Below are positions 1,988 through 33,021 of a stretch of DNA of 64,000 bases, one piece after another (the first letter of the stretch is position 1; the number at the start of each line of letters is the position of its first letter). Location: assembly GCA_002269645.1 (NCBI GenBank), contig NIVC01003094.1:1-64000 (forward strand), written 5' to 3'. The notes beneath the pieces were generated by a model that was given only the letters and a program-made list of their open reading frames with translations, did not search any database and was not told the DNA's origin. This DNA comes from Macrostomum lignano. Lineage: Eukaryota. The position numbers and the translations under genes are program-made.

Positions 1988-4847
1988 CTAATACGTTGGA
2001 CACCAGCTAGAAGCGTTCTTGACCGCGGTGACAAAAATCAGCAGCAAGACGGCCACAGAGCAGCTGACGGAGCAGATTATCAGCAGGCGGTCAATCGCTG
2101 AGCCAATCTGCTGCCACTCGGATCCCGGACTGGTTTTGATTGTTGTCATGGAAACCGACTCGAGCGATTGGGCTTGGTTGCTCTCCTTGCAGTTCTCAAC
2201 GCTTTGCTGCAAAAATTGTGCGACAGTTGCTAACTGCATCCGAGTGAGTTATTAAAGACTCAGAACTTTATGCTCACCACAGTGTTCTTCCAGCCGCACA
2301 GGCGGTTGAGGAACAGCAGCCTCAGCACTGGGCTGCTCACAGCCTCCCGCGATGCAGCTCTCCTGTAGCACAGGTGCACAACTATGCTGCCGATTGTGCT
2401 CAGAGCGGTCACAGCCATGGCCACCGTGAAGTACCAGGCTGGGGATGGGCAGAGACAGACTTGGCTCAGTGTAGCTGCATAGCACAGCACAGCACAGCAC
2501 AGCACAGCACAATACAGCACAGCACAGCACAGCACAGCACAGCACAATACAGCACAGTACAGCACAGCACAGCACAGCACAGCACAGCACAGCACAACAC
2601 AGCACAGCACAGCACAGCACAGCACAGCACAGCACAGCACAGCACACATCAATAGCCATACACTCTGACTCACTGAGCACTGGAACAGACTCGCTCTGAG
2701 CAGGGGTGATGCTGCCCGCCAGCTGCAGGAACACACTCATTGACAGCAGGATGGCCACATTCAGTGCCAGTCGGTCGCCCGAGTCCGCTGGCAGGAGAAA
2801 GCCGAAGATGCAGGTGGCGAGGATGAGGGCGCTGGGGATGATGAGCACGATGACGTAGTAGAGGGGCCGCCTCTGCAAAGGGATGGGGAGCGGGAGACTG
2901 AGCGGGCACTTAATGCCGAGCCTCGGGGACCTTTATATACGAGTATCTAGTTTCTATCTCACCTTGAAGCTGACAGTGATATTCACTATGTCGTGTTGTC
3001 CCATCTTACTATTCCAGGATGTATTGACATTGGTGACGCAGAATTCATTATTTTGGCTAGCAGTCACGACAATCTGCTGGTCATTGGGTCTTGGTAAAGC
3101 CTTCAGCCTGATGTATTTACTACCCTTCGCTACCGAGGACAGGTAGATTGAGCAGTGCTGGGAGTCGAACGGGAAATCGTTCAGCTTCATCTTGCACTTG
3201 TTGGTTGTGCCGTAGGACAGCAGTGCCGTGACCTGGCCATTCGCGAGCACCTTCGCTAGCAGCCTGTTCTTCTCGAAGCTGCGAATGTCGATGCTATGAG
3301 AGAGGTTGAGTAGCTTTTAAGTGAGTTGGTGTCAAAAGTGCAATAATCATCGTATACTTTTTTATAAGCTTTAGTGAATCATATTTGAGTTAGTAGCCAG
3401 CCAAAGATCATGAAAGATACATCGCTTCATATCTTTTTACTTATCATTATAAGTAAAGTACCAGTCAGAGGTTTGAATTATAAGCCGCAAAAACACCAAA
3501 TATTTCTAATACTGAATACCACGGACAACTAAAGCAACGTACAGGACGCGACACTGTACGAGCTAAATCTATACAAAATGTTTTGAAGGCCACTGTTCGC
3601 CGAGAAATACACTATGTAGATAGAAAGTTTTCATTTTTTCAGCTCAAAAATTGTTATTGCTTTCAATAGGAGGCAGACCCAATGCTCATCTTTGAGTTGT
3701 CCTTGGCTTACTGTGTAACAATATGTGTAACAGAAATGATAAAATAGATGCATACGAGCTAAAACTAAAGATTCGAGCCGTGCCATGCATTTTAATGATT
3801 TTTTAGGTACAGGAAATGTACGTAGAATATGAAATTAACATAGAATCCCAATTTTCCGAACAAAGAGCTTTACGAATATCAATAGAGATCTTATCCAAAG
3901 ATGAGCATTGCGTCTGCCTCCTATCGAAAGCAATAACAATTTTTATGCTGAAAAAAGAGAACTTCCTATCTCCGTAGTTCTACCATGTCCTTCTACTTTA
4001 GTAGTCCTTGCTGAATACTACTTTCGATTGTTGGCAATTCAGTAGTATCGACTAATTTTGAATCAATTTTTATCAGGAGCGAATCTGGTGATTGGCCAGT
4101 TGTGCCGTCTGAACGGATTTTGCAATGGTTCGCTCCTTCATCCAACGTGGAGCTGTGGGATTTCGAGGAGTTTGAGACGCGATCCCGGACGAGAAGAGAA
4201 GATAAGAGCAACTTTTGCACTTGAGCTATGGAGCTAATAAACTGAAATCTGATGTCGCACTCACGGCCTCATCACAATGACATCCGGCACCCAAATCATG
4301 TCGAGTGGCAGGAAGATTTCGTCAGTTGTCAGCAGCTCAGCATTGCCCGACCTGTCCCAGGCCAGTCTCCTGTCAGTCCATTGCTTGGGGGCGGAAGAGT
4401 TACAAAGGTTTTTTTCAGCATGAATGTAACATCAATATTTCTAATAACTCATCAAGCTTACCAGCATTATGTAGCTGTCAAGAGAAAACAACTGCTTCAC
4501 ATCATTCTGGAACAGCACAAGATGGAGCATCGTTATCGGACAGGGGTTAATTGAATTAGCGCTAGCGCTACATCACTATTTTTGGACATCTATGGTATTT
4601 ACTGGTGCCAACTCACCACTTCAAGCAGCTCGTTGACAAGGCAGTCCACAGTAACCAAGGTAGCGGTGCCATTGTCCTGCGGCGGAGCCGCCTCCTTGCA
4701 GTACCTGGCGGTCAGGTTCAGCCATCGGATCACCTGCTCCTCTCCAGATGCCGCTTCTTCTGTTTGAGAATGCACTCCTGATGACAGCAAGACGAGCACT
4801 GCTACGCAGAGTCTGCAGCAGAGGTCTGAGTATTGTTGAGTCCGCAT
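1988..4847 (-). CDS. Cys-loop ligand-gated ion channel, nAChR-like non-alpha, paralogue A (7 exons)
   Basis: Exons 4847-4617, 4506-4462 (45 nt), 4383-4265 (QWTDRRLAW..IWVPD), 3293-2963 (Cys-loop CKMKLNDFPFDSQHC), 2872-2674 (M1-M2), 2438-2278 (M3), 2233-1988 (M4 EWQQIGSAIDRLL). All GT-AG with consistent phases and no frameshift. Confidence 0.93.
2480..2647. repeat. (CAGCA)n in intron 5 of paralogue A
   Basis: Direct reading; the same repeat occupies the same intron in B, C and D. Confidence 0.97.
3611..3978. repeat. ~84-bp inverted repeat pair (3611-3694 / 3896-3978) in intron 3 of paralogue A; dispersed repeat family
   Basis: Arms match as reverse complements with few mismatches. Related sequence occurs at ~39935-40000 and ~61360-61450. 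Confidence 0.7.
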
Positions 4848-6513
4848 CGATCTATTCGGGTAGGAGCGCAGGCTCACACAGCAGTATTTGCCAAGTATCA
4901 CAGCGCCAGACTGCTAGCAGTTCACCAAACTAAGTAAGCAGAGCATGAACTGATGTAGACAAGCCTCTTATATATACATACTAGAGCAAATGCAGCCTTT
5001 TGCTATAACCAATAAGCTGATTGCGATTGCTGAGCTGAGTGAATGCGACGCTGATAAAGCAGTTGGTGGCATATTGGCCTGCCGTTTCCCCGACTCACTT
5101 TGCTCAGCGACTGCAAGGCTTTAATTAACAGTCACGACAGTTAAACCAAGCACTGAGCAGAGCACACAAAGGGCCGGGTTAGCATGGTGCTCAAATATTG
5201 AATTAGTAGAAGCTATCGCTGGGAAGCTTCAGAGTTGAATTTGTTTAAGCTGTGAGCAAGCGAAGTGACCATGGCAACATTTTTCGAGAAAGTGAACTTT
5301 CCGGTGCCCTTGCAGTTCACTGCCTAACGGATGAGAAAGTCAGGGCCGCTGTACACCCAGTGTGAGCGAGTGCGTAATCCGTATATGTACTTGGCAGCGT
5401 CCAAGGTACTCAACTTGAAGCAGACTAGAGTGAGTTCAGCTGCGCGCCACTTCAATTCGGCGACTCAAACTTTAATTAATGAGAGTCCGTGCAGCTTATA
5501 AACTTTCGTGCTGTCGTCCGTCAGACACATGGGTTTGATTCCGAGAAGAACAGTTAGTTTTCTGAGTTGCTTCAACTATTGGATATTGTTCAGAGTTGCC
5601 TAATTAGATTCTATTGACTCGGCTCTCTTCGTCACTGATGCACCGAATCAATTTGCTTAAGTGCTACTCAATTGTTTGCTTCCAGCCACCTAGCCAGTGC
5701 CCCGGCCGTATTGTCATGCAATTGTCCAATTTGTCAACTCTAGCTGTTCATCAAATATTATCCGTAAGAGTGCGTGACGCTTACGGTGTGGTTTGTGACC
5801 GGTCGGATGTTCTTTCTCTCCGGCCTCCGTCGCGCCCCGTCTCCGTCTCTCTGGCGCACCCACCTCCCCCCGATCTGGCTTTAAGGCCTTCTTCTCGCGT
5901 TGATTTGCCTCCCCTTTGTCTGTTTGCAGGGACTGCTAAAAATAGCATTACTGTGGTGCCAGCTCTAGAAGTCCCTGGCGATCCCTTGTAGGTGTTCGCG
6001 TCTGGCTTCTTTCGTGCTCTGACTGTGGAGTTAATGAAACCATTTATACTTCCGACTCAGTACCATCTTCATTTTAAAAAGCTCCCTTCTCAAACTCACT
6101 GCACTTACATGTAATAGACACACGGAAAGCTAAACCTTGACAATATCAGTATCGTAAAATCTAATCGAATGAAGAATTCTGAAGCTAATGTTTTTCACTA
6201 ATATAGGTACAAGTAAAACCCACGATGCCCTCAACTCCGGAGGTAACTACATCAGTCCGAAAGATTCAGTCTTCAGTTGCCTTGAAACAAGTGCAATGCG
6301 TCAAAATGATTATTATAGTTTAACAAGATAAAATATAGTTGTAATATATATCTGCTGCGGCAGTTTGGTTAACTGACCTATTGGTTCAATAATTAGCTGC
6401 TAGTGTTGGCTGCTGGAGTATTGCACGGTACACAGCTGATGTATTAGTTTATTAAGGAGTTAGTTTAGTAGTCCTTAAACTCGAATTGATGAGCTCGGTC
6501 ATCAGCACCCCGC

Positions 6514-9028
6514 CTAGTTGCTCTTGTTAGCGGTGGCGCCCAGCAACACGGTGACGGCCACGGAGAGGCTCACAACGCAGACCAGCATCAGTCTGTCCAG
6601 CACGCAGCTCACATGCAGCCACTCGTCTCCAGGATCGCGGCAGCCGTCCTGGACGCTGGCGAGGCTGCTGCTGGATGATGAGGCGGCCGCGGCCTTCGAT
6701 GTGGCGCTGCTGACTCGGTAATTCTGGCGAAAAATGAGAGCAATTTAAAGATTCGACAAGCTGTCAGCAGATAAAGTAAGACCAACGTCGGAAAATCTAA
6801 GTACATATGAGAGAGCACGCACCGACCAGCCGCACAGGCGGTTGAGGAACAGCAGCCTCAGCGCCGGGTTGCTCACAGCCTCCCGCGATGCAGCTCTCCT
6901 GTAGCACAGGTGCACAACTATGCTGCCGATTGTGCTCAGAGCGGTCACAGCCATGGCCACCGTGAAGTACCAGGCTATGGATGGGCAGAGACAGACTTGA
7001 CTCAGTGTAGCTGCACAGCACAGCACAGCACAGCACAGCACAGCACAGCACAGCACAGCACAGCACAGCACAGCACAGCACAATACAGCACAGCACAGCA
7101 CAGCACAGCACAGCACAGCACAGCACAGCACAGTACAGCACAGCACAATACAGCACAGTACAGCACAGCACAGCACAGCACAGCACAGCACAGCACAGTA
7201 CAGCACAGCACAGCACAGCACAGCACAGCACAGCACAGCACACATCAATAGCCATACACTTGGACTCACTGAGCACTGGAACAGACTCGCTCTGAGCAGG
7301 AGTGATGCTGCCCGCCAGCTGCAGGAACACACTCATTGACAGCAGGATGGCCACATTCAGTGCCAGTCGGTCGCCCGAGTCCGCTGGCAGGAGAAAGCCG
7401 AAGATGCAGGTGGCGAGGATGAGGGCGCTGGGGATGATGAGCACGATGACGTAGTAGAGGGGCCGCCTCTGCAATGGGATGGGGAGCGGGAGGCTGAGCG
7501 GGTAGTCAGAACAGAGACTGCTGTGCAATGAGTGAGTACCCAGCACCTCTCAAACATGCGGTATTTTACCTCAAATTCAACTGTAACCAAAAGCTTCTTG
7601 AATTGGGGAAATTGGGTGCTGAAGTCAATAATGACTGAGCGCACGCTAGTAACACAGTACTCATTGTTCTGCAGGTTTATCTCGCTGTAGTTGATAGGCA
7701 GCCCACTTTTTATCTCAAGCTGCAAAAGCGTCTGCTTCTTCGCCGCTGACGAGAAAGAAAACTGGCAAACTTGCGTGTCAAATGGAAAGTCGCGCATCTT
7801 CAGCGGGCACTTGATGGTTATGCCGAGCGGCGTTTCCAGTTTCATCCTACCGTTCGAGCTCACGTCAACCAAGAATTTGTTGGTTTCAAAGCTTTTGACG
7901 TCAACCCTGTCAAAATATTTACGAGAGTATTTGATAAAAGACTGGACTGTCTATGGCCGAGTGCAGTTCTGTGGCATTGGCTTTGGTTGGCTTTATTGTC
8001 TATGGCCGAGTGCAGCTCTGTGGCAGTGGCTTTGGTTGGCTTTATTGTCTATGGCCGAGTGCAGCTCTGTGGCAGTGGCTTTGGTTGGCTTTATTGTCTA
8101 TGGCCGAGTGCAGCTCTGTGGCAGTGGCTTTGATAGGCTTTATTGTCTATGGCCGAGTGCAGTTCTGTGGCAGTGGCTTTGGTTGGCTTTATTGTCTATG
8201 GCCGAGTGCAGCTCTGTGGCAGTGGCTTTGGTTGGCTTTATTGTCTATGGCCGAGTGCAGCTCTGTGGCAGTGGCTTTGATAGGCTTTTTTGATAGGCTG
8301 CAGCGAAAGGGGACTCTCCACCTGATCGGCTTTATTATCAACCAATATAAAAATCAATGCCATATTAAATTGGCAAACAGAACTCACGGATGGCTCAGAC
8401 TCAAGTCCGGAAGCCACACATAGTCTGTTGGTAGAAAGATCTTCTCAAACTTGGCCAGTTTGGGATCGTCGGTCTCGTTCCAGGCGAGTCGCGAATCTGT
8501 CCAAAACTGAAAATTCAGAGTTGTTCGAGGGCGGCCGAGGCAGGTGTTGCGGTAGATGTGCAGCTGCTACTCATTCAGGTAACTTAAAGGTGGATTATCT
8601 AGGAGTCAAACTCACCATCATTATCCAGAGATCCAAGGACACTAGCTGATTCACAACATCCTACAAAGCGTTTTTTCAGACTGATTTAACTGCTTTTAAA
8701 CCGATTACAGTGGCTATCGCATTTTTGAGTAAAAGTTTGAGCAAAAACCTGTAAGTTTGGGGAGTTAAAATACGATATACAATACTGCACCCTCAGCGGC
8801 ACTCACCACGCTGCTGATTCTGATGAGTTTAGTTCTAAACTTGATTACATTGGCCGTGCCGTTGTCTGGCGGAGGTGCCGCCACCTTGTAGTAGCCGGAG
8901 GTGATGTTCAGCAGCCGGATGATCCTCTCTTCGGTTGACATCCTGGAAGGCTCCTTCGCCGAGCAGACGGCGGCCTCGTGGGCTAGCAACGTCAATGTCA
9001 ACGCCAGAATAATCCCCTGTCTCAGCAT
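6514..9028 (-). CDS. Cys-loop ligand-gated ion channel, nAChR-like non-alpha, paralogue B (7 exons)
   Basis: Exons 9028-8807 (signal peptide), 8660-8616, 8506-8388 (FWTDSRLAW..VWLPD), 7906-7570 (CPLKMRDFPFDTQVC), 7468-7270, 6974-6823, 6723-6514 (EWLHVSCVLDRLML). AATAAA on the minus strand at ~6448-6453. Confidence 0.92.
7012..7243. repeat. (CAGCA)n in intron 5 of paralogue B
   Basis: Direct reading. Confidence 0.97.
7947..8292. repeat. 49-bp minisatellite, ~7 copies, intron 3 of paralogue B
   Basis: Unit CTTTGGTTGGCTTTATTGTCTATGGCCGAGTGCAGCTCTGTGGCAGTGG. Confidence 0.92.
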
Positions 9029-9510
9029 TGCTCGCTGGCTGAATTCAGCTGTGCTAATCCGGCTATCGACACCGAATCCCCCGATGGTTTTATTCGTTTA
9101 ATATTTCCCACAGGGGAGAACCACTTTGGGAAATTGCTGAATTAGATTCTGACAACTCCCCGCTCTCTAATTGACTAGAATGCAGCTGGGATAGCATCCC
9201 GTAAATAGGTTATCGTCTAAGTCAATTTGATGGACTGGCAAGCATTGTTTGCTTTCAGCATTATCCTCTGCCTTTTTAGCCACCAATCACTCCCAATTTA
9301 CTCGTCGTAATGCAAATTTGCGAATTTGCGTTGACCAGAAAATGGCTGCTGAGCAAACTTTTTGCTACAATAGACACTAAGTCCATTAAAGGCTCGTTAA
9401 TCAAAGGTCCATTATTGGTACTGATAAAAATTGGAGGTTGCGACAGACACGGAATGGGCGGAGACAGGCTTGGCTCAGTGTAGCTTTTTTGTTACCAATG
9501 CGTTTTTTTT

Positions 9511-10613
9511 GGTTAAAAAGCACATTGGTAACAGAACGGGAGGTTAAAAAGCACATTGGTAACAGAACGGGAGGTTGAAACAGACACATTGGTAACATAA
9601 CGGGAGGTTAAAAAACACATTGGTAACAGAACGGGAGGTTAAAAAACACATTGGTAACATAACGGGAGGTTAAAAAGCACATTGGTAACAGAACGGGAGG
9701 TTGAAACAGACACATTGGTAACAGAACGGGAGGTTAAAACAGACACATTGGTAACAGAACGGGAGGTTAAAACAGACACATTGGTAACAGAACGGGAGGT
9801 TAAAAAACACATTGGTAACATAACGGGAGGTTAAAACAGACACATTGGTAACAGAACGGGAGGTTAAAACAGACACATTGGTAACAGAACGGGAGGTTAA
9901 AAAACACATTGGTAACAGAACGGGAGGTTAAAACAGACACATTGGTAACAGAACGGGAGGTTGAAACAGACACATTGGTAACAGAACGGGAGGTTGAAAC
10001 AGACACATTGGTAACAGAACGGGAGGTTAAAACAGACACATTGGTAACAGAACGGGAGGTTAAAACAGACACATTGGTAACAGAACGGGAGGTTAAAACA
10101 GACACATTGGTAACAGAACGGGAGGTTGAAACAGACACATTGGTAACAGAACGGGAGGTTAAAAAACACATTGGTAACATAACGGGAGGTTAAAACAGAC
10201 ACATTGGTAACAGAACGGGAGGTTGAAACAGACACATTGGTAACAGAACGGGAGGTTGAAACAGACACATTGGTAACAGAACGGGAGGTTGAAACAGACA
10301 CATTGGTAACAGAACGGGAGGTTGAAACAGACACATTGGTAACAGAACGGGAGGTTGAAACAGACACATTGGTAACATAACGGGAGGTTAAAACAGACAC
10401 ATTGGTAACATAACGGGAGGTTAAAACAGACACATTGGTAACAGAACGGGAGGTTAAAAAGCACATTGGTAACAGAACGGGAGGTTAAAAAGCACATTGG
10501 TAACAGAACGGGAGGTTAAAAAGCACATTGGTAACGGAACGGGAGGTTAAAAAGCACATTGGTAACAGACCGGGAGGTTAAAACAGACACATTGGTAACA
10601 GAACGGGAGGTTG
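9511..10613. repeat. 33-bp minisatellite (with shorter variants), ~34 copies
   Basis: Unit AAAACAGACACATTGGTAACAGAACGGGAGGTT. Confidence 0.95.
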
Positions 10614-10764
10614 AGCTTGGGACACCTACACCTACACAGGGGACACCTTGGGACAGCTGCGAAGGGACACAATATTCTTACTATACAAGTGAGTCGATAA
10701 ATTATTGTTTAAATTACGACTCGAATGACAGCTGCTCTCACAATATTTGAATTAATAAATAGCT

Positions 10765-11240
10765 ATTGACTCATTGGTACACAGCCATTGGCTCATTGGT
10801 ACACAGACAAAAGTTCTTTGGTACCCAGCCATTGGCTCATTGGTACACAGACAAATAGTTCTTTGGTACACAGTCATTGGCTCATTGGTATACAGACAAA
10901 AGTTCTTTGGTACACAGTGATTGGCTCATTGGTACACAGACAAATAGTTCTTTGGTACACAGCCATTGGCTCATTGGTACACAGACAAAAGTTCTTTGGT
11001 ACACAGTAATTGGCTCATTGGTACACAGCCATTGGCTCATTTGTACACAGCCATTGGCTCATTTGTACACAGCCATTGGCTCATTGGTACACAGTTATTG
11101 GCTCATTGGTACACAGTTATTGGCTCATTGGTACACAGACAAATAGTTCTTTGGTACACAGCCATTGGCTCATTGGTACACAGTTATTGGCTCATTGGCA
11201 CACAGTTATTAGCTCATCGGTACACAGTTATTGGCTCGTT
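10765..11240. repeat. 21/41-bp minisatellite ATTGGCTCATTGGTACACAG(CC/TT)
   Basis: Direct reading. Confidence 0.9.
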
Positions 11241-11322
11241 TAAAAACAGTTATAATTTTATGATGCCATTCAGATGATTTTACTAGTGTGTCACGGTTAG
11301 TAAGAGGTCGGTGTCAAATCCA

Positions 11323-14300
11323 TCAGCAAGCTACAAAGCCGCTATTGGCAGCTGTGACGACAAGCAGCCCGCCAACAGCTGCAGCGGACAGGACAGCGCA
11401 GGCAATCAGCAGGCGGTCCACTACAGAGCCGATGTGACGCCACGCATCCGCGGGGTCGCTGCCTTGAAAACCGCACAGGCGGTTGAGGAACAACAGCCTC
11501 AGCACTGGGCTGCTCACAGCCTCCCGCGATGCAGCTCTCCTGTAGCACAGGTGCACAACTATGCTGCCGATTGTGCTCAGAGCGGTCACAGCCATGGCCA
11601 CCGTGAAGTACCAGGCTGGGGATGGGCAGAGACAGGCTTGGCTCAGTGTAGCTGCACAGCACAGCACAGCACAGTACAGCACAGCACAGCACAGCACAGC
11701 ACAGCACAGCACAGCACAGCACAGCACAGCACAGCACAGCACAGCACAGCACAGCACAGCACAGCACAGCACAGTACAGCACAGCACAGCACAGTACAGC
11801 ACAGCACAGCACAGCACAGCACAGCACAACACAGCACAGCACAGCACAGCACAGCACAGCACAGCACAGCACAGCACAGCACAGCCCAGCACAGCATAGT
11901 ATAACACAGCACAGCACAGCACAGCACAGCACAGCACAGCACAGCACAGCACAGCACAGCACAGCACAGCACAGCACAGCACAACACAGCACAGCACAGC
12001 ACAGCACAGCACAGCACAGCACAGCACACATCAATAGCCATACACTCTGACTCACTGAGCACTGGAACGGACTCGCTCTGAGCAGGAGTGATGCTGCCCG
12101 CCAGCTGCAGGAACACACTCATTGACAGCAGGATGGCCACATTCAGTGCCAGTCGGTCGCCCGAGTCCGCTGGCAGGAGAAAGCCGAAGATGCAGGTGGC
12201 GAGGATGAGGGCGCTGGGGATGATGAGCACGATGATGTAGTAGAGGGGCCGCCTCTGCAAAGGGGTGGGGTGCGGGAGGCTGAGCGGGCACTCAGCACAG
12301 AGACTGCTGTGCAATGGGGTGGGGAGCGGGAGGCTGAGCGGGCACTTAGCACAGAGACTGCTGTGCAATGGGGTGGGGAGTGAGAGGCTGAGTGATGCAG
12401 CTGGTAAAGCACAGATGTTCAACTCATCTGCTACTTGCCTTGAAGCTGATTGAAACCTGAACTTTTTCGTAATATTCATAGATAGATACTTTTGAAGTTT
12501 CAATGTGGCTGATGCAGAATTCGTTGCTCTCCTTGTTAAGATCGGCATAGGTTTTGTTTGCCTCCTGTCCCAATTCAAGCTGCAAATCCGCAGGCGTTTT
12601 CACAGCCGAGGAGAAGGTTGCGTTACACTGCTGGGAGTCGAAGGGAAAATACGCCATGTTCATCGGACACCTGCTGGTTACTCCGTATGGAATGCCGATT
12701 ATTACAATTCCATTTTGGTAGACAATAGACAAGTGTTTATTGGCCTCATAATTGCGGATTTCGACTCTGCGTTGCAGGAGTAGGTATTGCTCTGTGTTCG
12801 CCACAATGACAAGGCATTGCTTTTAAAGTTACATGATACATGCACATCTACATGATACATGCACATCTACATAATACATGCACATCTACATGATACATGC
12901 ACATCTACATGATACATGCACATCTACATGATACATGCAAAACTACATGATGCATGCACAGCTACATGATACATGCACAGCTACATGATACATGCACAGT
13001 TACATGATACACATCCGCAACTACATGATACACATAAACAGTTACATGATACACATACGCAACTACCGGTACATGATACACATACACAGTTACATGAAAC
13101 ACATACAGAACTACATGTTACTCATACGAAACTCTAAAACACAACCACAGTTAGTTACATTATACACATATACAGTTAAATAATACACATACACAGCTAC
13201 ATGATACACATACGCAACTACATGATACACATATACAGTTACATAATACACATACGCAACTAAATGATACACATACACAGTTACATGATACACATACGCA
13301 ACTACATGATACACATAAACAGTTACATGATACACACACGCAACTACATGATAAACATACACAGTTACATGATGCATGTACTTACGGGTGGTCCACGGTC
13401 ACATCGGGCAGCCACAGCCAGTCAGTCGGCACGAAGATTTTCTCAACCTTGGCTAAGCTTTCATCGCTTGTGTCATTCCAGGCTAATCGGGCATCTGTCC
13501 ATCTCTGAATAAATTTTTTTATTAATAGCACATTGCTATGCTCGTAACTGCATATGAGATTTGATTGAGCTGAGATGCATATGAGATTTGAATGAGCTGA
13601 GATGCATATGAGATTCGATTGAGCTGAGATACATATGAGATTTGATTGAGACGAGATACCTATGAGATTTGATTGAGCTGAAATACCTATGAGATTTGAT
13701 TGAGGTGAGATACCTATGAGATTTGATTGAGGTGAGATACCTATGAGATTTGGTTGAGGTGAGATACCTATGAGAGTTGATTGAGGTGAGATACCTATGA
13801 GAGTTGATTGAGGTGAGATGCATATGAGATTTGGTTGACCTGAGGTGCATATGAAATTCGATTGAGCTGAGATGCATATGAGATTTGGTTGAGGTGAGAT
13901 ACCTATGAGATTTGATTTAGGTGAGATACCTATGAGAGTTGATTTAGGTGAGATACCTATGAGATTTGATTGAGCTGAGGTGCACACACTGAGATGTAAA
14001 CGATGGCTTACCAGTATCATCCAGAGGTCAATGGACACTTGCTGTTTCACAATATCCTGAATGGCAGCAGCAACAGCTTTATTACACAAAGGTAGAGTTG
14101 AGCACAAGATGCACAAGCTGCACTCACCACGCTGCTCAATCGAACAACTTTAATGGACACAATGACAACATTCGCTGTGCCATTGTCTGGAGGCGGCGCC
14201 GCGCCCTTGCAGTAGCCGGAGGTGAGGTTCAGCAGCTCGACAATTCTCTCCTGGTTGGACTTCCTGGATTGCCCGGCCGAAGTCAGAACCCAAGCGAGCG

Positions 14301-14358
14301 CGAGCAGCATTTGCAGCAGGCCGGCTGCCCGGTGAGTCAGTGCTCGAGGAGGCTTCAT
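11323..14358 (-). CDS. Cys-loop ligand-gated ion channel, nAChR-like non-alpha, paralogue C (6 exons, minimal M3-M4 loop)
   Basis: Exons 14358-14128, 14056-14012, 13504-13386 (RWTDARLAW..LWLPD), 12766-12439 (CPMNMAYFPFDSQQC; GC donor AG|GCAAGT), 12254-12056, 11615-11323 (M3 and M4 in one exon). Confidence 0.92.
11652..12028. repeat. (CAGCA)n in intron 5 of paralogue C (longest copy)
   Basis: Direct reading. Confidence 0.97.
12829..13376. repeat. 19-21-bp ACATGATAC(A/ATGC)... minisatellite, intron 3 of C
   Basis: Direct reading. Confidence 0.85.
13548..13985. repeat. 27-bp minisatellite ATATGAGATTTGATTGAGCTGAGATGC, intron 2 of C
   Basis: Direct reading. Confidence 0.9.
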
Positions 14359-14620
14359 CAGCGAGGCTGGACTAATTCCGGGCTCCAGTGCTGCAGAATA
14401 AACTATTAATATTCATAGCCAGTTATCAGTTAGCAAGCAGTCAGACAGTTTGGCTCCATAAAAAATTGCGCAAATACAGAGAGGGGGGGCTCATTTGATT
14501 TGGCTGATCAGCATCTGAGCTGGGCTTAAGTAATTAATCCAGCAGTTCTGTTTGCCGAATAATAACAATGCTCAGACACGCACGCAAACATCCTGAGTTT
14601 GTTGACTTTAGACAGTTGGA

Positions 14621-15144
14621 ATCATTAGCATCGTTAGCACCATTAGCACTATTAGCATCATTAGCACCATTAGCACTATTAGCATCATTAGCACCATTAG
14701 CATCATTAGCATCAATAGCATCATTAGCATCATTAGCATCATTAGCACCATTAGCACCATTAGCACCATTAGCACTATTAGCATCATTAGCACCATTAGC
14801 ACTATTAGCATCATTAGCACCATTAGCACTATTAGCATCATTAGCACCATTAGCATCATTAGCATCGTTAGCACCATTAGCACCATTAGCACTATTAGCA
14901 TCATTAGCATCAATAGCATCATTAGCATCATTAGCATCATTAGCACCATTAGCACCATTAGCATCAATAGCACCATTAGCATTATTAGCATCATTAGCAT
15001 CAATAGCATCATTAGCATCATTAGCATCATTAGCACCATTAGCACCATTAGCATCAATAGCATCATTAGCATCATTAGCACCATTAGCACCATTAGCATC
15101 AATAGCATAATCAGCATAATCAGCATCATTAGCACCATTAGCAC
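14621..15144. repeat. 9-bp TAGCA(T/C)CAT repeat upstream of C
   Basis: Direct reading. Confidence 0.95.
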
Positions 15145-15908
15145 TGGAAACCATTGACATGACATGGCCACTAGTATTACTATAAACTAACATCAGCTCA
15201 GGTTTGTTAGTTTTACTTCTGCAATGTCGATCATAAATTTTGTAGGATGAGCAAAAATAACTCGACCTCTGTGTCCGTTTGAAGCTCGTTGCAACTCAAA
15301 AGTCAATCGACATATTCTGGACACTCACCTGGCTGGCTCTACATCAACTGCGATCACGACAGCGACAGCGCCTTTTTTAAGGGCCTTCCCATCAAGAAGC
15401 TGGAAGCGATCGATACTTTCATCTTCATCGTCCGTTTTTGTGATCGGCTCGTGACCTTCAACACCGACATCACCGCCGTTTTCGGGATGGTCGGGCGTGT
15501 TAAATCCGGATGCTCATGCGGTCGGCGCTGCATCACAACATCCGATTCAGTGCCCAGGCAGTACCAAATTCTCGCTAATCTCGTCTCGACCTGTGTCCGT
15601 TTGAAGCTCATTGAAACTCAAAAGTCTTCGCGCCTCAAGGTGTCAGCTGTTTGCGTTTCAAAGATGGCTCTTTTTCGGGGCGATCGTTGCGATCGGAGCG
15701 GCTTTCCTTCTCAAGAGCCACTCTTGCGATCTTTGCGCACTTCCCTCTTCTCCCGATGTGTATGGCAAAATTCCAGTAGTTGAAAAGTTGTGGATTTAAT
15801 GTTTAAAAAAACTGAAAACTTCAAATCTTGCCAATGCAGTTGGCAGCTGGAATCGGCCTGCAACAAAATCCGCACGATTTGCGGCGGCCTTCTGCTTCAT
15901 TTTTTTTA

Positions 15909-16330
15909 GGATTCGAACCTGAGACTATGATAAGGTGAGGTAAGCAGCATTCGAACCAAGGACCATTATAGGATGCAATAAGCAGGATTCGAACCTAGGA
16001 CAATTTTGGAACTCACTAAGTAGGATTCGAACCTAGGACTATTATAGGATCAACTATATGGATTCGAACCTAGGACTATTATAGGATCAACTATATGGAT
16101 TCGAACCTAGGACTATTATAGGATCAACTATATGGATTCAAAACTAGGACTATTATAGGATCAACTATACGGATTCGAACCTAGGACTATTATAAGATCA
16201 ACTATATGGATTCGAACCTAGGACTATTATAGGATCAACTATATGGATTCGAACCTAGGACTATTATAGGATCAACCATATGGATTCGAACCTAGGACCA
16301 TTAAAGGACTCACTAAGATTCAAACCTAAA
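15909..16330. repeat. 37-bp minisatellite containing a Pol III B-box (GGTTCGAATCC on the minus strand), ~12 copies
   Basis: Unit GGATTCGAACCTAGGACTATTATAGGATCAACTATAT; 9 intact GGATTCGAACC motifs. Confidence 0.9.
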
Positions 16331-16493
16331 ACTACTGGGAGAGTTTATTTCCTATAGCATATCAGGAAAATTAATAAATATCCAGATAATATCGATGACA
16401 GAGGATTATTAGAAAGATGCAGCTTCATAGAACAGAGGAGCTCAGTAAGCAGGCGTCAGCGATCAGGCACGGTGTCCGATGATTGAGCCGGAA

Positions 16494-19400
16494 TCAGAAT
16501 TCAGAAAATCTTATTTTTCTCAAAGCGGGCTCGCAGTCGCCGCTCCCCGCCGCGGTGAGAGCCAGACAGATCAGAATGCCAGCTGAAGCAACGATCGCGC
16601 CGAAGGCCAGCAGCCGATCGATGATGCGACCGATTTGAGGCCACTCGGCAGTTTCCATGGAAGTCGTTGCTGGGGCGACGCTCGTTTGCTTGCCGACCTG
16701 GTCAGCCCAGGCGGAGTCGTCATCGGCCTGCTTTGGGGCGGAATGAAATGCTCAGGTGAAAATTTAGAGGCAGGCATGGGGCTCGAACTCAGGAGCTCCA
16801 GACAGAGTACACATCAGATTTAGGAAGTCAGAACCATTGCCATGTAAAAGTCCAGAATCTCTGCTAATTAATCTAAAATGCGCTAAATAACAAATTTACA
16901 AGCAGAACTCTTAGCTCGTCTCACCACAGTGTTCTTCCAGCCGCACAGGCGGTTGAGGAACAGCAGCCTCAGCACTGGGTTGCTCACAGCCTCCCGCGAT
17001 GCAGCTCTCCTGTAGCACAGGTGCACAACTATGCTGCCGATTGTGCTCAGAGCGGTCACAGCCATGGCCACCGTGAAGTACCAGGCTGGGGATGGGCAGA
17101 GACAGGCTTGACTCAGTGTAGCTGCATAGCACAGCACAGCACAGCACAGCACAGCACAGCACAGCACAGCACAGCACAGCACAGCACAATACAGCACAGC
17201 ACAGCACAGCACAGCACAGCACAGCACAATACAGCACAGCACAGCACACCACAGCACAGCACAGCACAGCACTGCACACATCAATAGCCATACACTTGGA
17301 CTCACTGAGCACTGGAACAGACTCGCTCTGAGCAGGAGTGATGCTGCCCGCCAGCTGCAGGAACACACTCATTGACAGCAGGATGGCCACATTCAGTGCC
17401 AGTCGGTCGCCCGAGTCCGCTGGCAGGAGAAAGCCGAAGATGCAGGTGGCGAGGATGAGGGCGCTGGGGATGATGAGCACTATGACGTAGTACATCGGCA
17501 GTCTCTGGAGTGTTGAGTGTAAATATTTGGCCAGAAATTGAAACAAAATATTTGCGTTATAACAATGCAGTCGTCAGTCAACTAAAAGTCTGTACCTTAA
17601 AAGTAATGATAACCTCCATCTGGTGGTAACTAGAATAGACCCATTTCAGAATCGAGTCAACGGCAGTGACGCAGTACTCGTTGCTGCGGAGAAACCGAAT
17701 CGATAGGTCAATAGCGATGCTTCGCACCACTCTGAGCCGCAGCGAATTGGGCGGTCTCTGGCCCGAGGCCATGCTGAAATTGCACTGCTGTTTGTCAAAC
17801 GGAAAGCTGGCCAGCTGCATGTTGCATTTTTTTGTTAAGCCGAATGCCAGCTTGGTTTGCACCTGACCGTCTGAGCTGATCTCGGCTAGCAGTTTGCTCT
17901 GATCGTGGTTGCGAATCTCCACACTGGAAATGTTCAGGCTATGGTTGTGAAGTTCGGGCACAAGGAAAATAAGGATACTCGTAGAAGTGCAGGAGAGATA
18001 AGGATAGGAATACAGGTGAGATAAAAAAGGATAGGAATAAAGGTGAGATAAGGCTAGGAATACAGGTGAGATAAGGATAGGAATACAGGTGAGATAAGGC
18101 TAGGAATACAGGTGAGATAAGGATAGGAATACAGGTGAGATAAGGATAGGAATACAGGTGATATAAGGCTAGGAATACAGGTGGGATAAGGATAGGAATA
18201 CAGGTGAGATAAGGATAGGAATACAGGTGAGATAAGGCTAGGAATACAGGTGAGATAAAAAGGATAGGAATAAAGGTGAGATAAGGCTAGGAATACAGGT
18301 GAGATATGGATAGGAATACAGGTGAGATAAGGATAGGAATACAGGTGAGATATGGATAGGAATACAGGTGAGATAAGGATAGGAATACAGGTGAGATAAG
18401 GATAGGTATACAGGTGAGATAAGGCTAGGAATACAGGTGAGATATGGATATAAATACAGGTGAGATAAGGATAGGAATACAGGTGAGATAAGGATAGGAA
18501 TACAGGTGAGATAAGGCTAGGAATACAGGTGAGATAAGGAGAGGAATACAGGTGAGATATGGATAGGAATACAGGTGAGATAAGGAGAGGAATACAGGTG
18601 AGATAAGGATAGGAATACAGGTGAGATAAGGATAGGTATACAGGTGAGATAAGGCTAGGAATACAGGTGAGATATGGATATAAATACAGGTGAGATAAGG
18701 ATAGGAATACAGGTGAGATAAGGATAGGAATACAGGCGAGATAAGGCTAGGAATACAGGTGAGATAAGGAGAGGAATACAGGTGAGATATGGATAGGAAT
18801 ACAGGTGAGATAAGGCTAGGAATACAGGTGAGATAAGGAGAGGAATACAGGTGAGATATGGATAGGAATACAGGTGAGATAAGGATAGGAATACAGGTGA
18901 GATAAGGATAGGTATACAGGTGAGATAAGGCTAGGAATACAGGTGAGATATGGATATAAATACAGGTGAGATAAGGATAGGAATACAGGTGAGATAAGGA
19001 TAGGAATACAGGCGAGATAAGGCTAGGAATACAGGTGAGATAAGGAGAGGAATACAGGTGAGATATGGATAGGAATACAGGTGAGATAAGGCTAGGAATA
19101 CAGGTGAGATAAGGAGAGGAATACAGGTGAGATATGGATAGGAATACAGGTGAGATAAGGATAGGAATACAGGTGAGATAAGGATAGGTATACAGGTGAG
19201 ATAAGGCTAGGAATACAGGTGAGATATGGATATAAATACAGGTGAGATAAGGATAGGAATACAGATGAGAAAAGGATATAGGAACACTCGGAAATAAAGA
19301 TACGAGTAGAAACACAAAAATTAGTATTGAATAAGAAGTCAATAAAGAATCCCAGCCGTGCGATGTGTGAAAGTTGATGGCATAAATTACAAGCGGCACC

Positions 19401-21467
19401 CACCAATGTCTGACACAGTCTCCAAAGTGGATTTAATTATAAGCCGCACCATTTTAAAGTAAAGTGTCTTTAAAGTGTCTGTCAAGCCGCATGGGTGGTC
19501 AAATATTGCTAATGGATGCCCAGAGCCTGTCAGTTTTAGACACCATTCGGAGCAAATAGATAAGTAGGATAGTTATCAAACTCACGGCTGGCTAACGCTG
19601 ATGTCAGGTGTCCACAGCCAATCCAGAGGCGCGTAGATGGCGCCAACTGCGGCCAGTTCCGGTCTGGCGATTCCTTTCCAGGCTAGTCGGGGGTCTGTCC
19701 AGTTCTGTTGTATTGACATCAGTGTGGCAGAAATGATTGATGAGTCAACACGTTGGCTTTGGAGTGAGGCTGCGGGTTGGAAGGTTGTCCCAAGGTTGAT
19801 GCAAATAGATCGATGAGGAAGGTGTATGCTTGTATGTGTGCTTGGAAGTAACGAGAAGGCTGTGTTTGGGAAGTGAGGCTGGCATGGGAGTCAGGGGGAG
19901 AGGGTGGTATGAGAGTCAGGGGTGAGCTTTGTGGCATAAGAGTCAGGGGGAGAGGGTGGTATGAGAGTCAGGGGTGAGCTTTGTGGCATAAGAGTCAGGG
20001 GGAGAGGGTGGTATGAGAGTCAGGGGTGAGCTTTGTGGCATAAGAGTCAGGGGGAGAGGGTGGTATGAGAGTCAGGGGTGAGGTTTGTGGCATAAGAGTC
20101 AGGGGGAGAGGGTGGTATGAGAGTCAGGGGTGAGGTTTGTGGCATAAGAGTCAGGGGGAGAGGGTGGTATGAGAGTCAGGGGTGAGGTTTGTGGCATAAG
20201 AGTCAGGGGGAGAGGGTGGTATGAGAGTCAGGGGTGAGGTTTGTGGCATGAGAGTCAGGGGTGAGGTTTGTGGCATGAGAGTCAGGGGGAGAGGGTGGTA
20301 TGAGAGTCAGGGGTGAGGTTTGTGGCATGAGAGTCAGGGGATGAGGCTTGTGGCATGAGAGTCAGGGGTGAGGCTTGTAGCATGAGAGTCAGGGAGTGAG
20401 GCTTGTGGCATGAGAGTCAGGGATTGTGAGGGTGGCATAAGAGTCAGGGGTGAGGGTGGCATGAGAGTCAGGGATTGTGAGGGTGGCATGAGAGTCAGGG
20501 ATTGTGAGGGTGGCATGAGAGTCAGGGATTGTGAGGGTGGCATGAGAGTCAGGGGGTGAGGTGGCATGAGAGTCAGGGATTGTGAGGGTGGCATGAGAGT
20601 CAGGGGGTGAGGTGGCATGAGAGTCAGGGGTGAGGGTGGCATGAGAGTCAGGGATTGTGAGGGTGGCACGAGAGTCAGGGGTGAGGGTGGCATGAGAGTC
20701 AGAGAGTGAGGTGGCATGAGAGTCAGGGGTGAGGGTGGCATGAGAGTCAGGGGTGAGGGTGGCACGAGAGTCATGGGTGGTGGTTGGCATGAGAGTCAGA
20801 GAGTGAGGTGGCATGAGAGTCAGGGGTGAGGGTGGCACGAGAGTCATGGGTGGTGGTTGGCATGAGAGTCAGGGGTGAGGGTGGCATGAGAGTCAGGGGT
20901 GAGGGTGGCACGAGAGTCATGGGTGGTGGTTGGCATGAGAGTCAGAGAGTGAGGTGGCATGAGAGTCAGGGGTGAGGGTGGCACGAGAGTCATGGGTGGT
21001 GGTTGGCATGAAAGTCAGGGGTGAGGGTGGCATGAGAGTCAGGGGTGAGGGTGGCACGAGAGTCATGGGTGGTGGTTGGCATGAGAGTCAGAGAGTGAGG
21101 TGGCATGAGAGTCAGTGCATGTTTAACAGACTGCTTACCATGGAAACTCTGTTCTCCAGCACAATGAACTGCTTGACCATGTCCTGTAAAGAGCACAAAT
21201 AAATTAACAAATGAGAATGCGATGATTTAGCGCAAATCCGGACAAACCGGCTCTACTTACGACATCAATGAGCTTGACTATCTCAATCATGATGGTCACA
21301 ACGACGGCCGTGCCATTGATCGGTCTCGGACTGGCGCCTTTGACATAGCCGCCGTTGGTGAGATTCAGCATCCGGATGATCTGCTCATCGACAGACGCGT
21401 CATCGGCGACAGGTTCCGCCGCATTGGTTGCTAGGAGCAGCTGTGCTAAAATCCCTGCCAGTAGCAT
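16494..21467 (-). CDS. Cys-loop ligand-gated ion channel, nAChR-like non-alpha, paralogue D (7 exons)
   Basis: Exons 21467-21261, 21183-21139, 19704-19586 (NWTDPRLAW..LWTPD), 17923-17596 (CNMQLASFPFDKQQC), 17504-17306, 17085-16925, 16727-16494 (EWPQIGRIIDRLL). Confidence 0.92.
17125..17280. repeat. (CAGCA)n in intron 5 of paralogue D
   Basis: Direct reading. Confidence 0.97.
17986..19275. repeat. 23-bp minisatellite TAAGGATAGGAATACAGGTGAGA, ~55 copies, intron 3 of D
   Basis: Direct reading. Confidence 0.95.
19884..21114. repeat. G-rich ~24-bp minisatellite GGCATGAGAGTCAGGGGTGAGGGT, intron 2 of D
   Basis: Direct reading; the same family occurs at 27155-27540. Confidence 0.93.
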
Positions 21468-32105: not shown

Positions 32106-33021
32106 AATACTGCAATGTAGTAGTTCAGACAATTATTATCGAATGTGGAATATGATAAGCACAATTTACATTTAGTTAGTGCCAGGGAAACCTCTCATTT
32201 AGTTACTTTGTAATGTTTATTGATAGATGAACACCTCATATTCTATTCCAGTCATGGATTTTAACGCTGAAGGCTCTTCCACACCCTTCGTGAATTGAGT
32301 CATGGAATTTTGTAGCAGTGCAAAGCGACGAAAAAGTACATGTATGTAAAATTGGTCTTACTCAATTGCGGTGTGAACGAGTCTCTCGTACACTAGACAG
32401 CATTATTTAGTTAGAAAACATACGAGTAAGTAATCCAATCCCCATGCTTGATAGTCCTCAAGTGATCAAATACCGTATTGAACATTATCTCTTGTTCAGT
32501 AAGGTGCTGCTCTGGTGCCATTTTACAAATGTATAAAAACTAGTGATATACTATAATGCTAACAATATAAACACGTTCGCCTTAATCTGGCTTGAATATA
32601 AGCCTGTGTTAATCCACAACAATTTTATGCACAAAGGATAAATAAGACTACGTCGACCATTTAGTTTAATGCTATTGCGCAGAGACGCGTCAGCGCGTGA
32701 GTCACAGAAGGCCCAATTTGCACACCGAGAGCTAAAAATAGATCCGGGCCAGTGCGACCATTCACCCATCAATGTACAGACAGATTCAGTCAGGTTCTAA
32801 AAATAGACACAAGAGAGGAAATCCCTCTCCGCAGTTGGGCGGCCTGGGGGCTCCATGACTGCTTTTCAACCTCTGCCAGCGTGGCAGAATCCAAACAAGA
32901 AACAGTATTTAAGCTGGATTTACAGCCAGCGCGCACACCAAGAAGGCATACGCAGGCAAGATCTGCTACGCAGAAATCAACAATCGCTTTAACGAGAGTA
33001 GGAGCAATTACAAAAGAGTTC

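What the first reader, a model, noticed from the sequence alone, without database searches (positions are those of the whole stretch)
2278..17504. Constant pore, variable sensor: near-identical M1-M3 module (including an intron) in four otherwise highly divergent Cys-loop receptors
Seen: exon 5 (199 nt), intron 5 with its (CAGCA)n tract, and the M3 exon are almost identical in A (2278-2872), B (6823-7468), C (~11470-12254) and D (16925-17504), including synonymous and intronic sites; the proteins differ at only a few residues. The flanking extracellular exons and M4/C-tail exons are only about one-third identical by eye. The identity has sharp, paralogue-specific edges. D diverges in the first ~8 codons (RLPMYY vs RRPLYY) and in its upstream intron, while A/B/C share part of intron 4. 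At the 3' end A and D share sequence through WKNTV|GTGAG, B only to CGW, C only to CG. Purifying selection cannot explain intronic identity. Inference: localised gene conversion or unequal exchange keeps one pore (M2 GDRLALNVAILLSMSVFLQ) while ligand-binding domains diversify, a constant/variable receptor architecture.
Basis: partly seen in the sequence, partly recalled or inferred. Interest (0 to 1): 0.9.

Follow-up and report, generated by a model that had tools for sequence, protein, structure and literature searches.

The report
Gene conversion homogenises receptor pore module
Four neighbouring ion-channel receptor genes of the flatworm Macrostomum lignano differ widely in their ligand-binding halves but share an almost identical 0.6-0.9 kb membrane-pore segment, intron included, because the copies overwrite one another there by gene conversion, a known process not previously reported for this receptor family.

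Summary
The window is Macrostomum lignano, assembly Mlig_3_7, contig NIVC01003094.1. It holds four tandem minus-strand Cys-loop receptor genes, A to D. Their extracellular domains are 36-48% identical, with saturated synonymous sites (pS 0.62-0.75). Their M4 tails are 23-41% identical. Exon 5, the unique flanks of intron 5 and most of exon 6 (pre-M1 to post-M3) are 97-99% identical (dS 0.02-0.07). At 4-fold sites in shared codons, 60/64 are identical in all four genes inside the module and 5/26 outside (p=4e-12). The tract edges differ per gene. The few variable sites support all three possible groupings of the four copies, a mosaic. The assembly holds two further subgenome copies of the locus. 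In one of them, gene B carries a gene-C-type module at 11/11 diagnostic sites, flanked by B-type sequence at 7/7 sites. That looks like a C-to-B conversion tract of about 0.6-1 kb. Localised interlocus gene conversion is therefore strongly supported, and a simple assembly artefact or purifying selection is not. An adaptive "constant pore / variable sensor" design is untested, because homology-limited conversion explains the pattern without it. Protocadherin clusters and TLR1/TLR6 show the same process, so this is a new member of a known kind.

The parts
1988..4847 (-). Gene A, Cys-loop receptor, 7 exons (4847-4617, 4506-4462, 4383-4265, 3293-2963, 2872-2674, 2438-2278, 2206-1988), 434 aa
   Evidence: Gene model. 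Identical to NCBI PAA50078.1/P0005. Pfam Neur_chan_LBD + Neur_chan_memb.
6514..9028 (-). Gene B, 7 exons (9028-8807, 8660-8616, 8506-8388, 7906-7570, 7468-7270, 6974-6823, 6723-6514), 427 aa
   Evidence: The ECD matches UniRef M. lignano models P0155 and P0002.
11323..14358 (-). Gene C, 6 exons (14358-14128, 14056-14012, 13504-13386, 12766-12439 with a GC donor, 12254-12056, 11615-11323), 404 aa. It has no intron 6, and exon 6 runs in frame into M4 with a shortened intracellular loop.
16494..21467 (-). Gene D, 7 exons (21467-21261, 21183-21139, 19704-19586, 17923-17596, 17504-17306, 17085-16925, 16730-16494), 431 aa
   Evidence: The P0018 fragment is contained in this model.
2273..2906 (-). 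Homogenised tract in A: last ~34 nt of intron 4, exon 5, intron 5, exon 6 and GTGAG
6826..7530 (-). Homogenised tract in B. Its 5' edge lies ~60 nt into intron 4 (shared with C). Its 3' edge comes after TGCGGCTGG (exon 6 +149).
   Evidence: (family D16).
11471..12316 (-). Homogenised tract in C. Its 3' edge comes after TGCGG (exon 6 +145).
16920..17480 (-). Homogenised tract in D. Its 5' edge lies inside exon 5 at +25. Its 3' edge is the end of exon 6 plus GTGAG.
2477..2646 (-). Intron 5 microsatellite (GTGCT)n of gene A, 33 units
7013..7242 (-). Intron 5 microsatellite of gene B, 45 units
11654..12028 (-). Intron 5 microsatellite of gene C, 74 units
17124..17278 (-). Intron 5 microsatellite of gene D, 30 units
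12256..12392 (-). 54-nt tandem repeat (2.5 copies) that duplicates the 3' end of intron 4 of gene C. The L002 locus copy has 5 copies.
9451..9485 (-). Orphan 35-nt copy of the 3' flank of intron 5 in the B-C intergenic region, next to a 33-nt minisatellite

Best explanation
A to D are four old tandem paralogues of a Macrostomum-specific group of cation-type Cys-loop (pentameric ligand-gated) channel subunits. A 0.6-0.9 kb genomic segment is kept almost identical among them by recurrent non-allelic gene conversion, that is, repair of one copy using a neighbouring copy as template. The segment runs from the end of intron 4 or the start of exon 5, through intron 5, to near the end of exon 6, and encodes pre-M1, M1, M2 (the pore), M3 and the first ~35 residues of the intracellular loop.

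Shown:
- The identity extends to synonymous and intronic sites.
- The tract edges are gene-specific and ignore exon borders.
- The residual variants form a mosaic.
- At least one apparent C-to-B tract arose after the three subgenome copies of the locus separated.

Inferred:
- Conversion is confined to this segment because heteroduplex cannot extend into flanks that are only ~50-60% identical. The process would then be self-reinforcing, with the flanks having escaped long ago.
- The (GTGCT)n microsatellite at the centre of every tract may serve as a homology anchor that point mutation cannot erode, or as a break-prone initiation site.
- The functional result is four subunits with one pore and one set of transmembrane interfaces but four different extracellular domains. 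Whether selection favours this outcome is not known.
For: - Four intact genes with Neur_chan_LBD + Neur_chan_memb domains.
- By region: ECD pS 0.62-0.75, module dS 0.02-0.07, tail dS 0.9-1.9.
- 4-fold sites identical in all four genes: 60/64 in the module against 5/26 outside, p=3.7e-12.
- The intron-5 flanks are near identical and the tract edges differ per gene.
- All three two-by-two partitions occur among the variable sites.
- The locus exists in three contigs of Mlig_3_7 (window=L003, L001, L002). This fits the three subgenomes described in PMC10733133.
- L002 gene B differs from the other two B copies at 13/390 core sites, but from gene C at only 2-4. It matches C at 11/11 diagnostic sites from exon 5 +19 to exon 6 +123. 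It matches B at 7/7 diagnostic sites just outside that span.
- L002 gene B keeps an intact ORF.
- The microsatellite arrays are copy-specific in length and interruptions, so the copies are physically distinct.
- GC3 is 0.79 in the module against 0.60-0.67 in the ECD, the direction expected from GC-biased conversion.
- Another M. lignano array with comparable ECD divergence (36-47%) has only 74-81% TM identity. Ordinary constraint therefore does not give 97-99%.
Against: - No raw reads were available. Polishing with multi-mapping reads could have exaggerated identity, or could have produced the C-type module of L002 gene B.
- Gene D could be examined in one subgenome copy only.
- No sister-species sequence was available, so the classical test (paralogues closer than orthologues) could not be run.
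- The roles proposed for the microsatellite and for homology limitation are inference only.
- The GC3 difference could reflect the codon usage of hydrophobic segments.
- Only gene A is annotated or transcript-supported in the NCBI record. Expression of B, C and D is not shown.
Confidence: 0.9

Rival explanations
1. Assembly or polishing artefact. The near-identity of the modules would be created by collapsed reads or by consensus polishing with mis-mapped reads, and the real copies would be as diverged as their flanks.
For: M. lignano is a neopolyploid with about three copies of most loci, and 93% of read pairs map to multiple places (PMC10733133). Mis-polishing is therefore a real risk in this assembly. 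The single L002 B event in particular could be a polishing product.
Against: - The module sits in frame, with correct splice sites, in four different genes on each of three contigs.
- It is also visible in proteins predicted from the older assembly (P0002, P0004, P0018).
- Each copy has private SNPs and its own microsatellite length and interruption pattern.
- Polishing cannot turn ~55% identical sequence into 98% identical sequence.
- The L002 B tract switches type twice within about 1 kb and carries two private changes, which is not what a mis-join produces.
Confidence: 0.03
2. Purifying selection on the nucleotide sequence itself keeps the segment identical without any exchange between copies. 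The selected function could be an overlapping antisense transcript, an RNA structure or splicing elements.
For: - The segment includes a peculiar intronic (GUGCU)n repeat that could bind RNA-binding proteins.
- The TM region is the most constrained part of the family.
Against: - Selection would have to hold 60/64 4-fold sites and 64/70 intron-flank sites for a time in which ECD synonymous sites became saturated.
- It does not explain gene-specific edges, incompatible partitions, or the B copy that carries C-specific derived variants.
Confidence: 0.02
3. One-off recent replacement. A single event of exon shuffling, template switching or segmental copying placed the same segment into all four genes shortly before the genome duplication, and there is no continuing conversion.
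For: Module divergence (1-3%) is of the same order as the divergence between subgenomes (2.2% genome-wide, 1.1% in CDS). Most of the homogenisation could therefore date from one period.
Against: - Four different 5' and 3' edges and mosaic site patterns need several events.
- The L002 B tract post-dates the split of the subgenome copies.
- Mechanistically, each such replacement would still be a gene conversion.
Confidence: 0.05

Closest known systems
Regional gene conversion in clustered protocadherin genes (fugu, zebrafish, human; PMC1852091 and the work it cites)
   Same: - Tandem paralogues of a neural membrane receptor.
- The N-terminal recognition domains (EC1-EC3) stay diverse.
- The membrane-proximal, TM and cytoplasmic-proximal part is nearly 100% identical among paralogues, including synonymous sites.
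- GC3 is raised in the converted part.
- Converted regions differ between subclusters.
   Different: - Protocadherin variable regions are single large exons, so no intron is co-converted.
- The alpha and gamma clusters additionally share true constant exons by splicing. Here every gene has its own copy of everything.
- Here the tract is an internal segment, with a divergent M4 tail downstream.
- The protein is an ion-channel subunit, not an adhesion molecule.
TLR1/TLR6 gene conversion in mammals (PMC2077338)
   Same: Tandem paralogues in which a C-terminal block that includes the transmembrane domain is repeatedly homogenised by independent conversion events, while the N-terminal ligand-recognition part diverges. 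The authors propose that conversion limits the divergence of functional regions.
   Different: - Two genes rather than four.
- An intronless coding region.
- Recurrent conversion was shown there by comparing nine species, which could not be done here.
Lineage-specific tandem expansions of nAChR-like Cys-loop genes in lophotrochozoans (PMC6896357)
   Same: Large lineage-specific arrays of divergent nAChR-like subunits. Tandem duplication is a main driver.
   Different: - That study reports retroposition and stepwise duplication. The word 'conversion' does not occur in its text.
- The molluscan expansions are mostly intron-poor. These flatworm genes keep 5-6 introns.
- No shared TM module was described there.

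Membership tests
Cys-loop / pentameric ligand-gated ion channel superfamily | Extracellular ligand-binding domain (Pfam PF02931) followed by the transmembrane region (PF02932) | tested here: met
   All four proteins score above the gathering thresholds for both domains.
Cys-loop / pentameric ligand-gated ion channel superfamily | Signature disulphide loop, two Cys separated by 13 residues, with the FPFD motif | tested here: met
   Read directly from the models: A has CKMKLNDFPFDSQHC, and B, C and D have the equivalent.
Cys-loop / pentameric ligand-gated ion channel superfamily | Four membrane helices M1-M4 | tested here: met
   Full-length alignment to 5-HT3A and nAChR chains covers M1-M3 and the M4 segment.
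Cation-selective branch (nAChR / 5-HT3 type pore) | Acidic residue at M2 -1', Leu at 9', Val at 13' | tested here: met
   SGDRLALNVAILLSMSVF aligns with SGERVSFKITLLLGYSVF of 5-HT3A. Best PDB matches are 5-HT3A, nAChR alpha7 and beta, E~1e-33 to 1e-34. Ion selectivity itself was not measured.
Canonical acetylcholine/serotonin-binding subunit | Loop B tryptophan (cation-pi residue; W183 of 5-HT3A) | tested here: not met
   The aligned position is V in A (alignment) and A, A and G in B, C and D.
Canonical acetylcholine/serotonin-binding subunit | Vicinal Cys pair in loop C (alpha-type nAChR) | tested here: not met
   Only a single Cys is present (NEFCV / NEYCV) in all four.
Canonical acetylcholine/serotonin-binding subunit | Gating by ACh or 5-HT | not testable with these tools
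   Needs electrophysiology.
Regional interlocus gene conversion (concerted evolution of a gene segment) | Paralogues identical at synonymous and intronic sites in one segment, with saturated flanks | tested here: met
Regional interlocus gene conversion (concerted evolution of a gene segment) | Breakpoints that differ among copies, and phylogenetically incompatible sites (a mosaic) | tested here: met
   AC|BD, AB|CD and AD|BC are all present.
Regional interlocus gene conversion (concerted evolution of a gene segment) | Paralogues within a lineage closer than orthologues between lineages | tested here: inconclusive
   Seen once between subgenome copies: the L002 B module is 2-4 differences from C but 13 from the other B copies. 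No sister-species sequence was available.
Regional interlocus gene conversion (concerted evolution of a gene segment) | Raised GC3 in the converted segment | tested here: met
   0.78-0.79 against 0.60-0.67 in the ECD. This is weak evidence, because amino-acid composition differs between the regions.
Shared constant exons joined to variable exons by splicing (protocadherin alpha/gamma, UGT1A type) | One genomic copy of the constant exons serves many variable exons | tested here: not met
   Each of the four genes has its own exon 5, intron 5, exon 6, M4 exon and stop codon.

The most novel reading that the evidence does not exclude
The shared module is not just a by-product of homology-limited repair. 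On this reading it is a selected arrangement. The four subunits must keep identical pore-lining and TM-interface helices so that they can co-assemble in any combination, which would give a combinatorial set of receptors with one channel and many sensors. The (GTGCT)n microsatellite in intron 5, found nowhere else in the 64 kb, would act as a cis-acting homology anchor or break hotspot that drives the homogenisation.
Probability: 0.15. Interest if true: 0.75.

Novelty: new member of a known kind. Interest (0 to 1): 0.5.

Why it matters
- It is a very clean example of domain-restricted concerted evolution in a pentameric ligand-gated channel family. My literature searches found no earlier case in this family.
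- An intron is co-converted, which rules out protein-level selection. One tract is visible as a difference between subgenome copies.
- Trees built from full-length or TM sequences of such arrays will be wrong. Only the ECD records the gene history.
- Annotation and read mapping in M. lignano will confuse these genes.
- The array offers four natural chimeras (four ECDs on one pore) for asking how orphan ECDs couple to a common channel.
- The three subgenomes of M. lignano allow conversion rate and tract length to be measured in a transgenesis-capable animal.

Tried and rejected
- **GENECONV-style permutation.** I permuted the longest concordant run over polymorphic sites only. It was uninformative because the tract is shared by all four sequences and so contributes almost no polymorphic sites. 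I replaced it with the 4-fold-site contrast and the diagnostic-site analysis.
- **Contig look-ups.** P0001, P0003, P0018 and P0010 are not on record. I therefore could not get DNA for gene D in the other two subgenome copies, or for the other M. lignano Cys-loop arrays. L004 covers gene A only.
- **Unequal crossing-over as the sole mechanism.** Rejected, because both flanks of every module remain gene-specific.
- **Module as part of a mobile element.** Rejected. It replaces homologous exons in frame, and the only stray piece is a 35-nt fragment.
- **cDNA-mediated conversion.** Rejected, because the intron is included.
- **More module-bearing genes.** The word-based search and the exhaustive HMMER search (checked) found the module only in A-, B- and D-derived proteins. 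Gene C appears only as a frameshifted piece inside P0002.
Full report
**What the window is.** The first 14,847 bases are 100% identical to GenBank contig NIVC01003094.1 of assembly GCA_002269645.1. All close protein matches are named Macrostomum lignano. This is the Mlig_3_7 assembly of the free-living flatworm. That genome is a recent neopolyploid, and about 85% of the sequence is present in three paralogous copies. Those copies differ by 2.2% SNPs genome-wide and 1.1% in coding sequence (PMC10733133).

**Gene anatomy.** tblastn and reading of the minus strand give four tandem genes in the same orientation: A 1988-4847, B 6514-9028, C 11323-14358 and D 16494-21467. Each has the exon pattern 207-231 / 45 / 119 / 328-337 / 199 / 152-161 / ~210-237 nt. 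Introns are GT-AG, with one GC-AG intron in C, and the reading frames are intact. Gene C has no intron 6, and its exon 6 continues in frame into M4 with a much shorter intracellular loop. My model of A is identical to NCBI protein PAA50078.1 (P0005). Parts of B and D match UniRef models from the older assembly. In the NCBI record only gene A is called.

**Family.** All four proteins have Pfam Neur_chan_LBD and Neur_chan_memb domains and a 13-residue Cys-loop with FPFD. The best solved relatives are 5-HT3A and nAChR alpha7/beta (E about 1e-33 to 1e-34).
- The M2 helix (SGDRLALNVAILLSMSVF) keeps an acidic -1', Leu 9' and Val 13' when aligned to 5-HT3A. A cation-type pore is therefore likely.
- The loop B tryptophan is replaced by V, A, A and G, and loop C has one Cys instead of a vicinal pair. 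These are orphan subunits, not canonical ACh or 5-HT receptors.
- The nearest relatives are other M. lignano arrays at ~35% identity, then an annelid protein at ~30%.

- blastn of the A module finds three other copies in the 64 kb and nothing more, apart from a 35-nt fragment.
- Mean pairwise nucleotide identity along the coding alignment is 0.34-0.62 across most of the ECD. It reaches 0.69 in the window that straddles the junction with the module, 0.96-1.00 over about 300 columns, and then falls back to 0.53-0.69.
- By region: ECD 36-48% aa with pS 0.62-0.75 (saturated); module 97-99% aa with dS 0.022-0.074; tail 23-41% aa with dS 0.9-1.9.
- Among 4-fold sites in codons whose amino acid is shared by all four genes, 60/64 are identical in all four inside the module and 5/26 outside (p=3.7e-12).
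- The 30 + 40 nt of unique sequence flanking the intron-5 microsatellite have only six variable positions.
A, B and C share the last 34-60 nt of intron 4, and B and C share the most. D joins only at exon 5 +25. At the 3' end A and D run to the end of exon 6 plus GTGAG, B stops at +149 and C at +145.

**Why this is conversion and not constraint or artefact.**
- Identity at synonymous and intronic sites excludes protein-level selection.
- The edges do not follow exon borders and the intron is included, so the exchange is between genomic DNA copies and not cDNA.
- The few informative sites support all three possible splits of four sequences. AC|BD is supported at intron 5 +8/+9 and -26 and at exon 6 +106. 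AB|CD is supported at intron 5 -21. AD|BC is supported at the last microsatellite unit. No single tree fits this, which is the mosaic expected from repeated partial tracts.
- The microsatellite arrays differ in length (33, 45, 74 and 30 units) and in their interruptions. The four copies are therefore physically distinct and not one collapsed sequence.
- For comparison, another M. lignano array (P0008/P0003) with similar ECD divergence (36-47%) has 74-81% TM identity, not 97-99%.

**A conversion seen between subgenome copies.** Gene A's protein is encoded on three contigs. L001 (NIVC01000984.1) and L002 (NIVC01003722.1) carry genes C, B and A at 97-99.5% identity to the window. All have intact ORFs.
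- In the 390-nt unique core of the module, the three A copies are identical, and the window and L001 copies of B are identical.
- L002 gene B differs from those B copies at 13 sites, but from gene C at only 2-4 sites.
- Site by site, L002 B has the C state at all 11 positions where B and C differ between exon 5 +19 and exon 6 +123, including the intron flanks. It has the B state at all 7 diagnostic positions just outside (intron 4 -7, -11, -17; exon 6 +146 to +150).
- It encodes the C-type residues V248I, N343S and A345V.
- This looks like a C-to-B conversion tract. It corresponds to window 7450-6852 at minimum and 7474-6830 at maximum, and it arose after the subgenome copies separated.
- Caveat: without reads I cannot exclude that polishing with mis-mapped reads produced this one pattern. 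The double switch and two private changes argue against that.

**Mechanism, with shown and inferred steps separated.** Shown: recurrent, short (about 0.6-1 kb), DNA-level, non-reciprocal-looking exchanges among tandem paralogues, confined to one segment. The following steps are inferred.
- The flanks are only ~50-60% identical, so heteroduplex cannot extend into them. The tract is thus self-limiting and self-perpetuating, and each edge marks where a given copy has escaped.
- This explains the 'constant pore, variable sensor' picture without any adaptive design.
- The (GTGCT)n repeat lies in the middle of every tract and occurs nowhere else in the 64 kb. It is a stretch of homology that point mutation cannot erode and a plausible fragile site, so it may seed the exchanges.
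- GC3 is higher in the module (0.79 against 0.60-0.67). This is the direction expected from GC-biased conversion, but the evidence is weak.

**What is not shown.**
- That the ECDs are diversifying under positive selection. Their divergence is simply old, and dN/dS cannot be estimated with saturated dS.
- That B, C and D are expressed.
- That the subunits co-assemble.
- That selection maintains the shared pore.

**Comparison with what is known.** Regional homogenisation of the membrane-proximal, TM or cytoplasmic part of tandem receptor paralogues, with N-terminal recognition domains left diverse, is established for protocadherin clusters (PMC1852091) and for TLR1/TLR6 (PMC2077338). The survey of lophotrochozoan nAChR expansions reports tandem duplication and retroposition but no conversion (PMC6896357). 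Full-text searches combining gene conversion with Cys-loop or ligand-gated channel terms returned nothing relevant. This is therefore a new member of a known kind. It is well documented and useful, but not a new principle.

**Verdict.** The gene-conversion inference is supported with confidence about 0.9. The adaptive constant/variable reading is open, at about 0.15. Interest is 0.5.

Noticed in passing
window 9451-9485 (minus strand): An isolated 35-nt copy of the 3' flank of intron 5 (GCTACACTGAGCCAAGCCTGTCTC..., identical to gene C's version over 24 nt) sits in the B-C intergenic region. It lies directly beside a 33-nt minisatellite (9511-10612). Its origin is unknown. It could be the relic of a lost gene copy or of a template switch.
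   Followed up: partly
window 11323-11615 and 12439-12766: Gene C has lost intron 6. An in-frame deletion fuses exon 6 to the M4 exon, leaving a very short M3-M4 loop. The donor of its intron 4 is GC instead of GT.
   Followed up: partly
window 12256-12392; L002 2290-2540: The 3' end of intron 4 of gene C, including an AG-containing pseudo-acceptor (TTGCACAG), is tandemly repeated as a 54-nt unit. There are 2.5 copies in the window and 5 copies in the L002 subgenome copy.
   Followed up: partly
window 1-22000: Many of the introns and all the intergenic spacers of the array carry their own distinct mini- or microsatellites, with periods of 3, 9, 19-28, 33, 37, 49 and 52 nt. The largest are more than 1 kb, in introns 2 and 3 of gene D (17990-19278, 19873-21115).
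   Followed up: no
L001 10881-12618 (insertion point = window ~3968-3972, intron 3 of gene A): One subgenome copy has a 1.74-kb insertion with ~100-nt terminal inverted repeats (a foldback or TIR-type element). It is absent from the window and from L002.
   Followed up: partly
L002 7237-7833 (intron 5 of gene B): The microsatellite of the converted B copy is 597 nt, against 225-230 nt in the other B copies. It contains an internal ~225-nt duplication and a 2-nt register shift. This is either a real expansion that accompanied the conversion or a long-read assembly error.
   Followed up: no
window 6514-21467; L001-L003 gene tables: Genes B and C are not annotated in the NCBI record of Mlig_3_7, where only gene A is called within 10 kb. 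The gene tables did not reach gene D. B and D appear only as fragmentary or fused models from the older assembly in UniRef.
   Followed up: partly
intron 5 of all four genes (2477-2646, 7013-7242, 11654-12028, 17124-17278): In the pre-mRNA the repeat reads (GUGCU)n, which is 30-74 tandem UGCU (YGCY-type) motifs. From my own knowledge, that motif class is bound by muscleblind-like splicing factors. A splicing-regulatory role was not tested.
   Followed up: no
window 32752-33453 (+), 43164-43607 (-), 44288-45904 (+), 63078-63560 (+): The rest of the window holds several other features:
- a Ras/Rab-family GTPase exon;
- a PIG-M mannosyltransferase exon;
- a retrotransposon integrase ORF (Integrase_H2C2, rve, DUF5641), upstream of that PIG-M exon on the opposite strand;
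- a reverse-transcriptase fragment.
   Followed up: partly
proteins P0008, P0009, P0003, P0158 (other M. lignano loci, no DNA held): Other M. lignano Cys-loop arrays were predicted as fused multi-receptor proteins. Their M2 region (ECGERVSFSITIVLSMCVFLQLAGNYTPTQSESVPL) is nearly invariant, and TM identity is 74-81% against 36-47% in the ECD. Older or weaker regional homogenisation there cannot be judged without DNA.
   Followed up: partly
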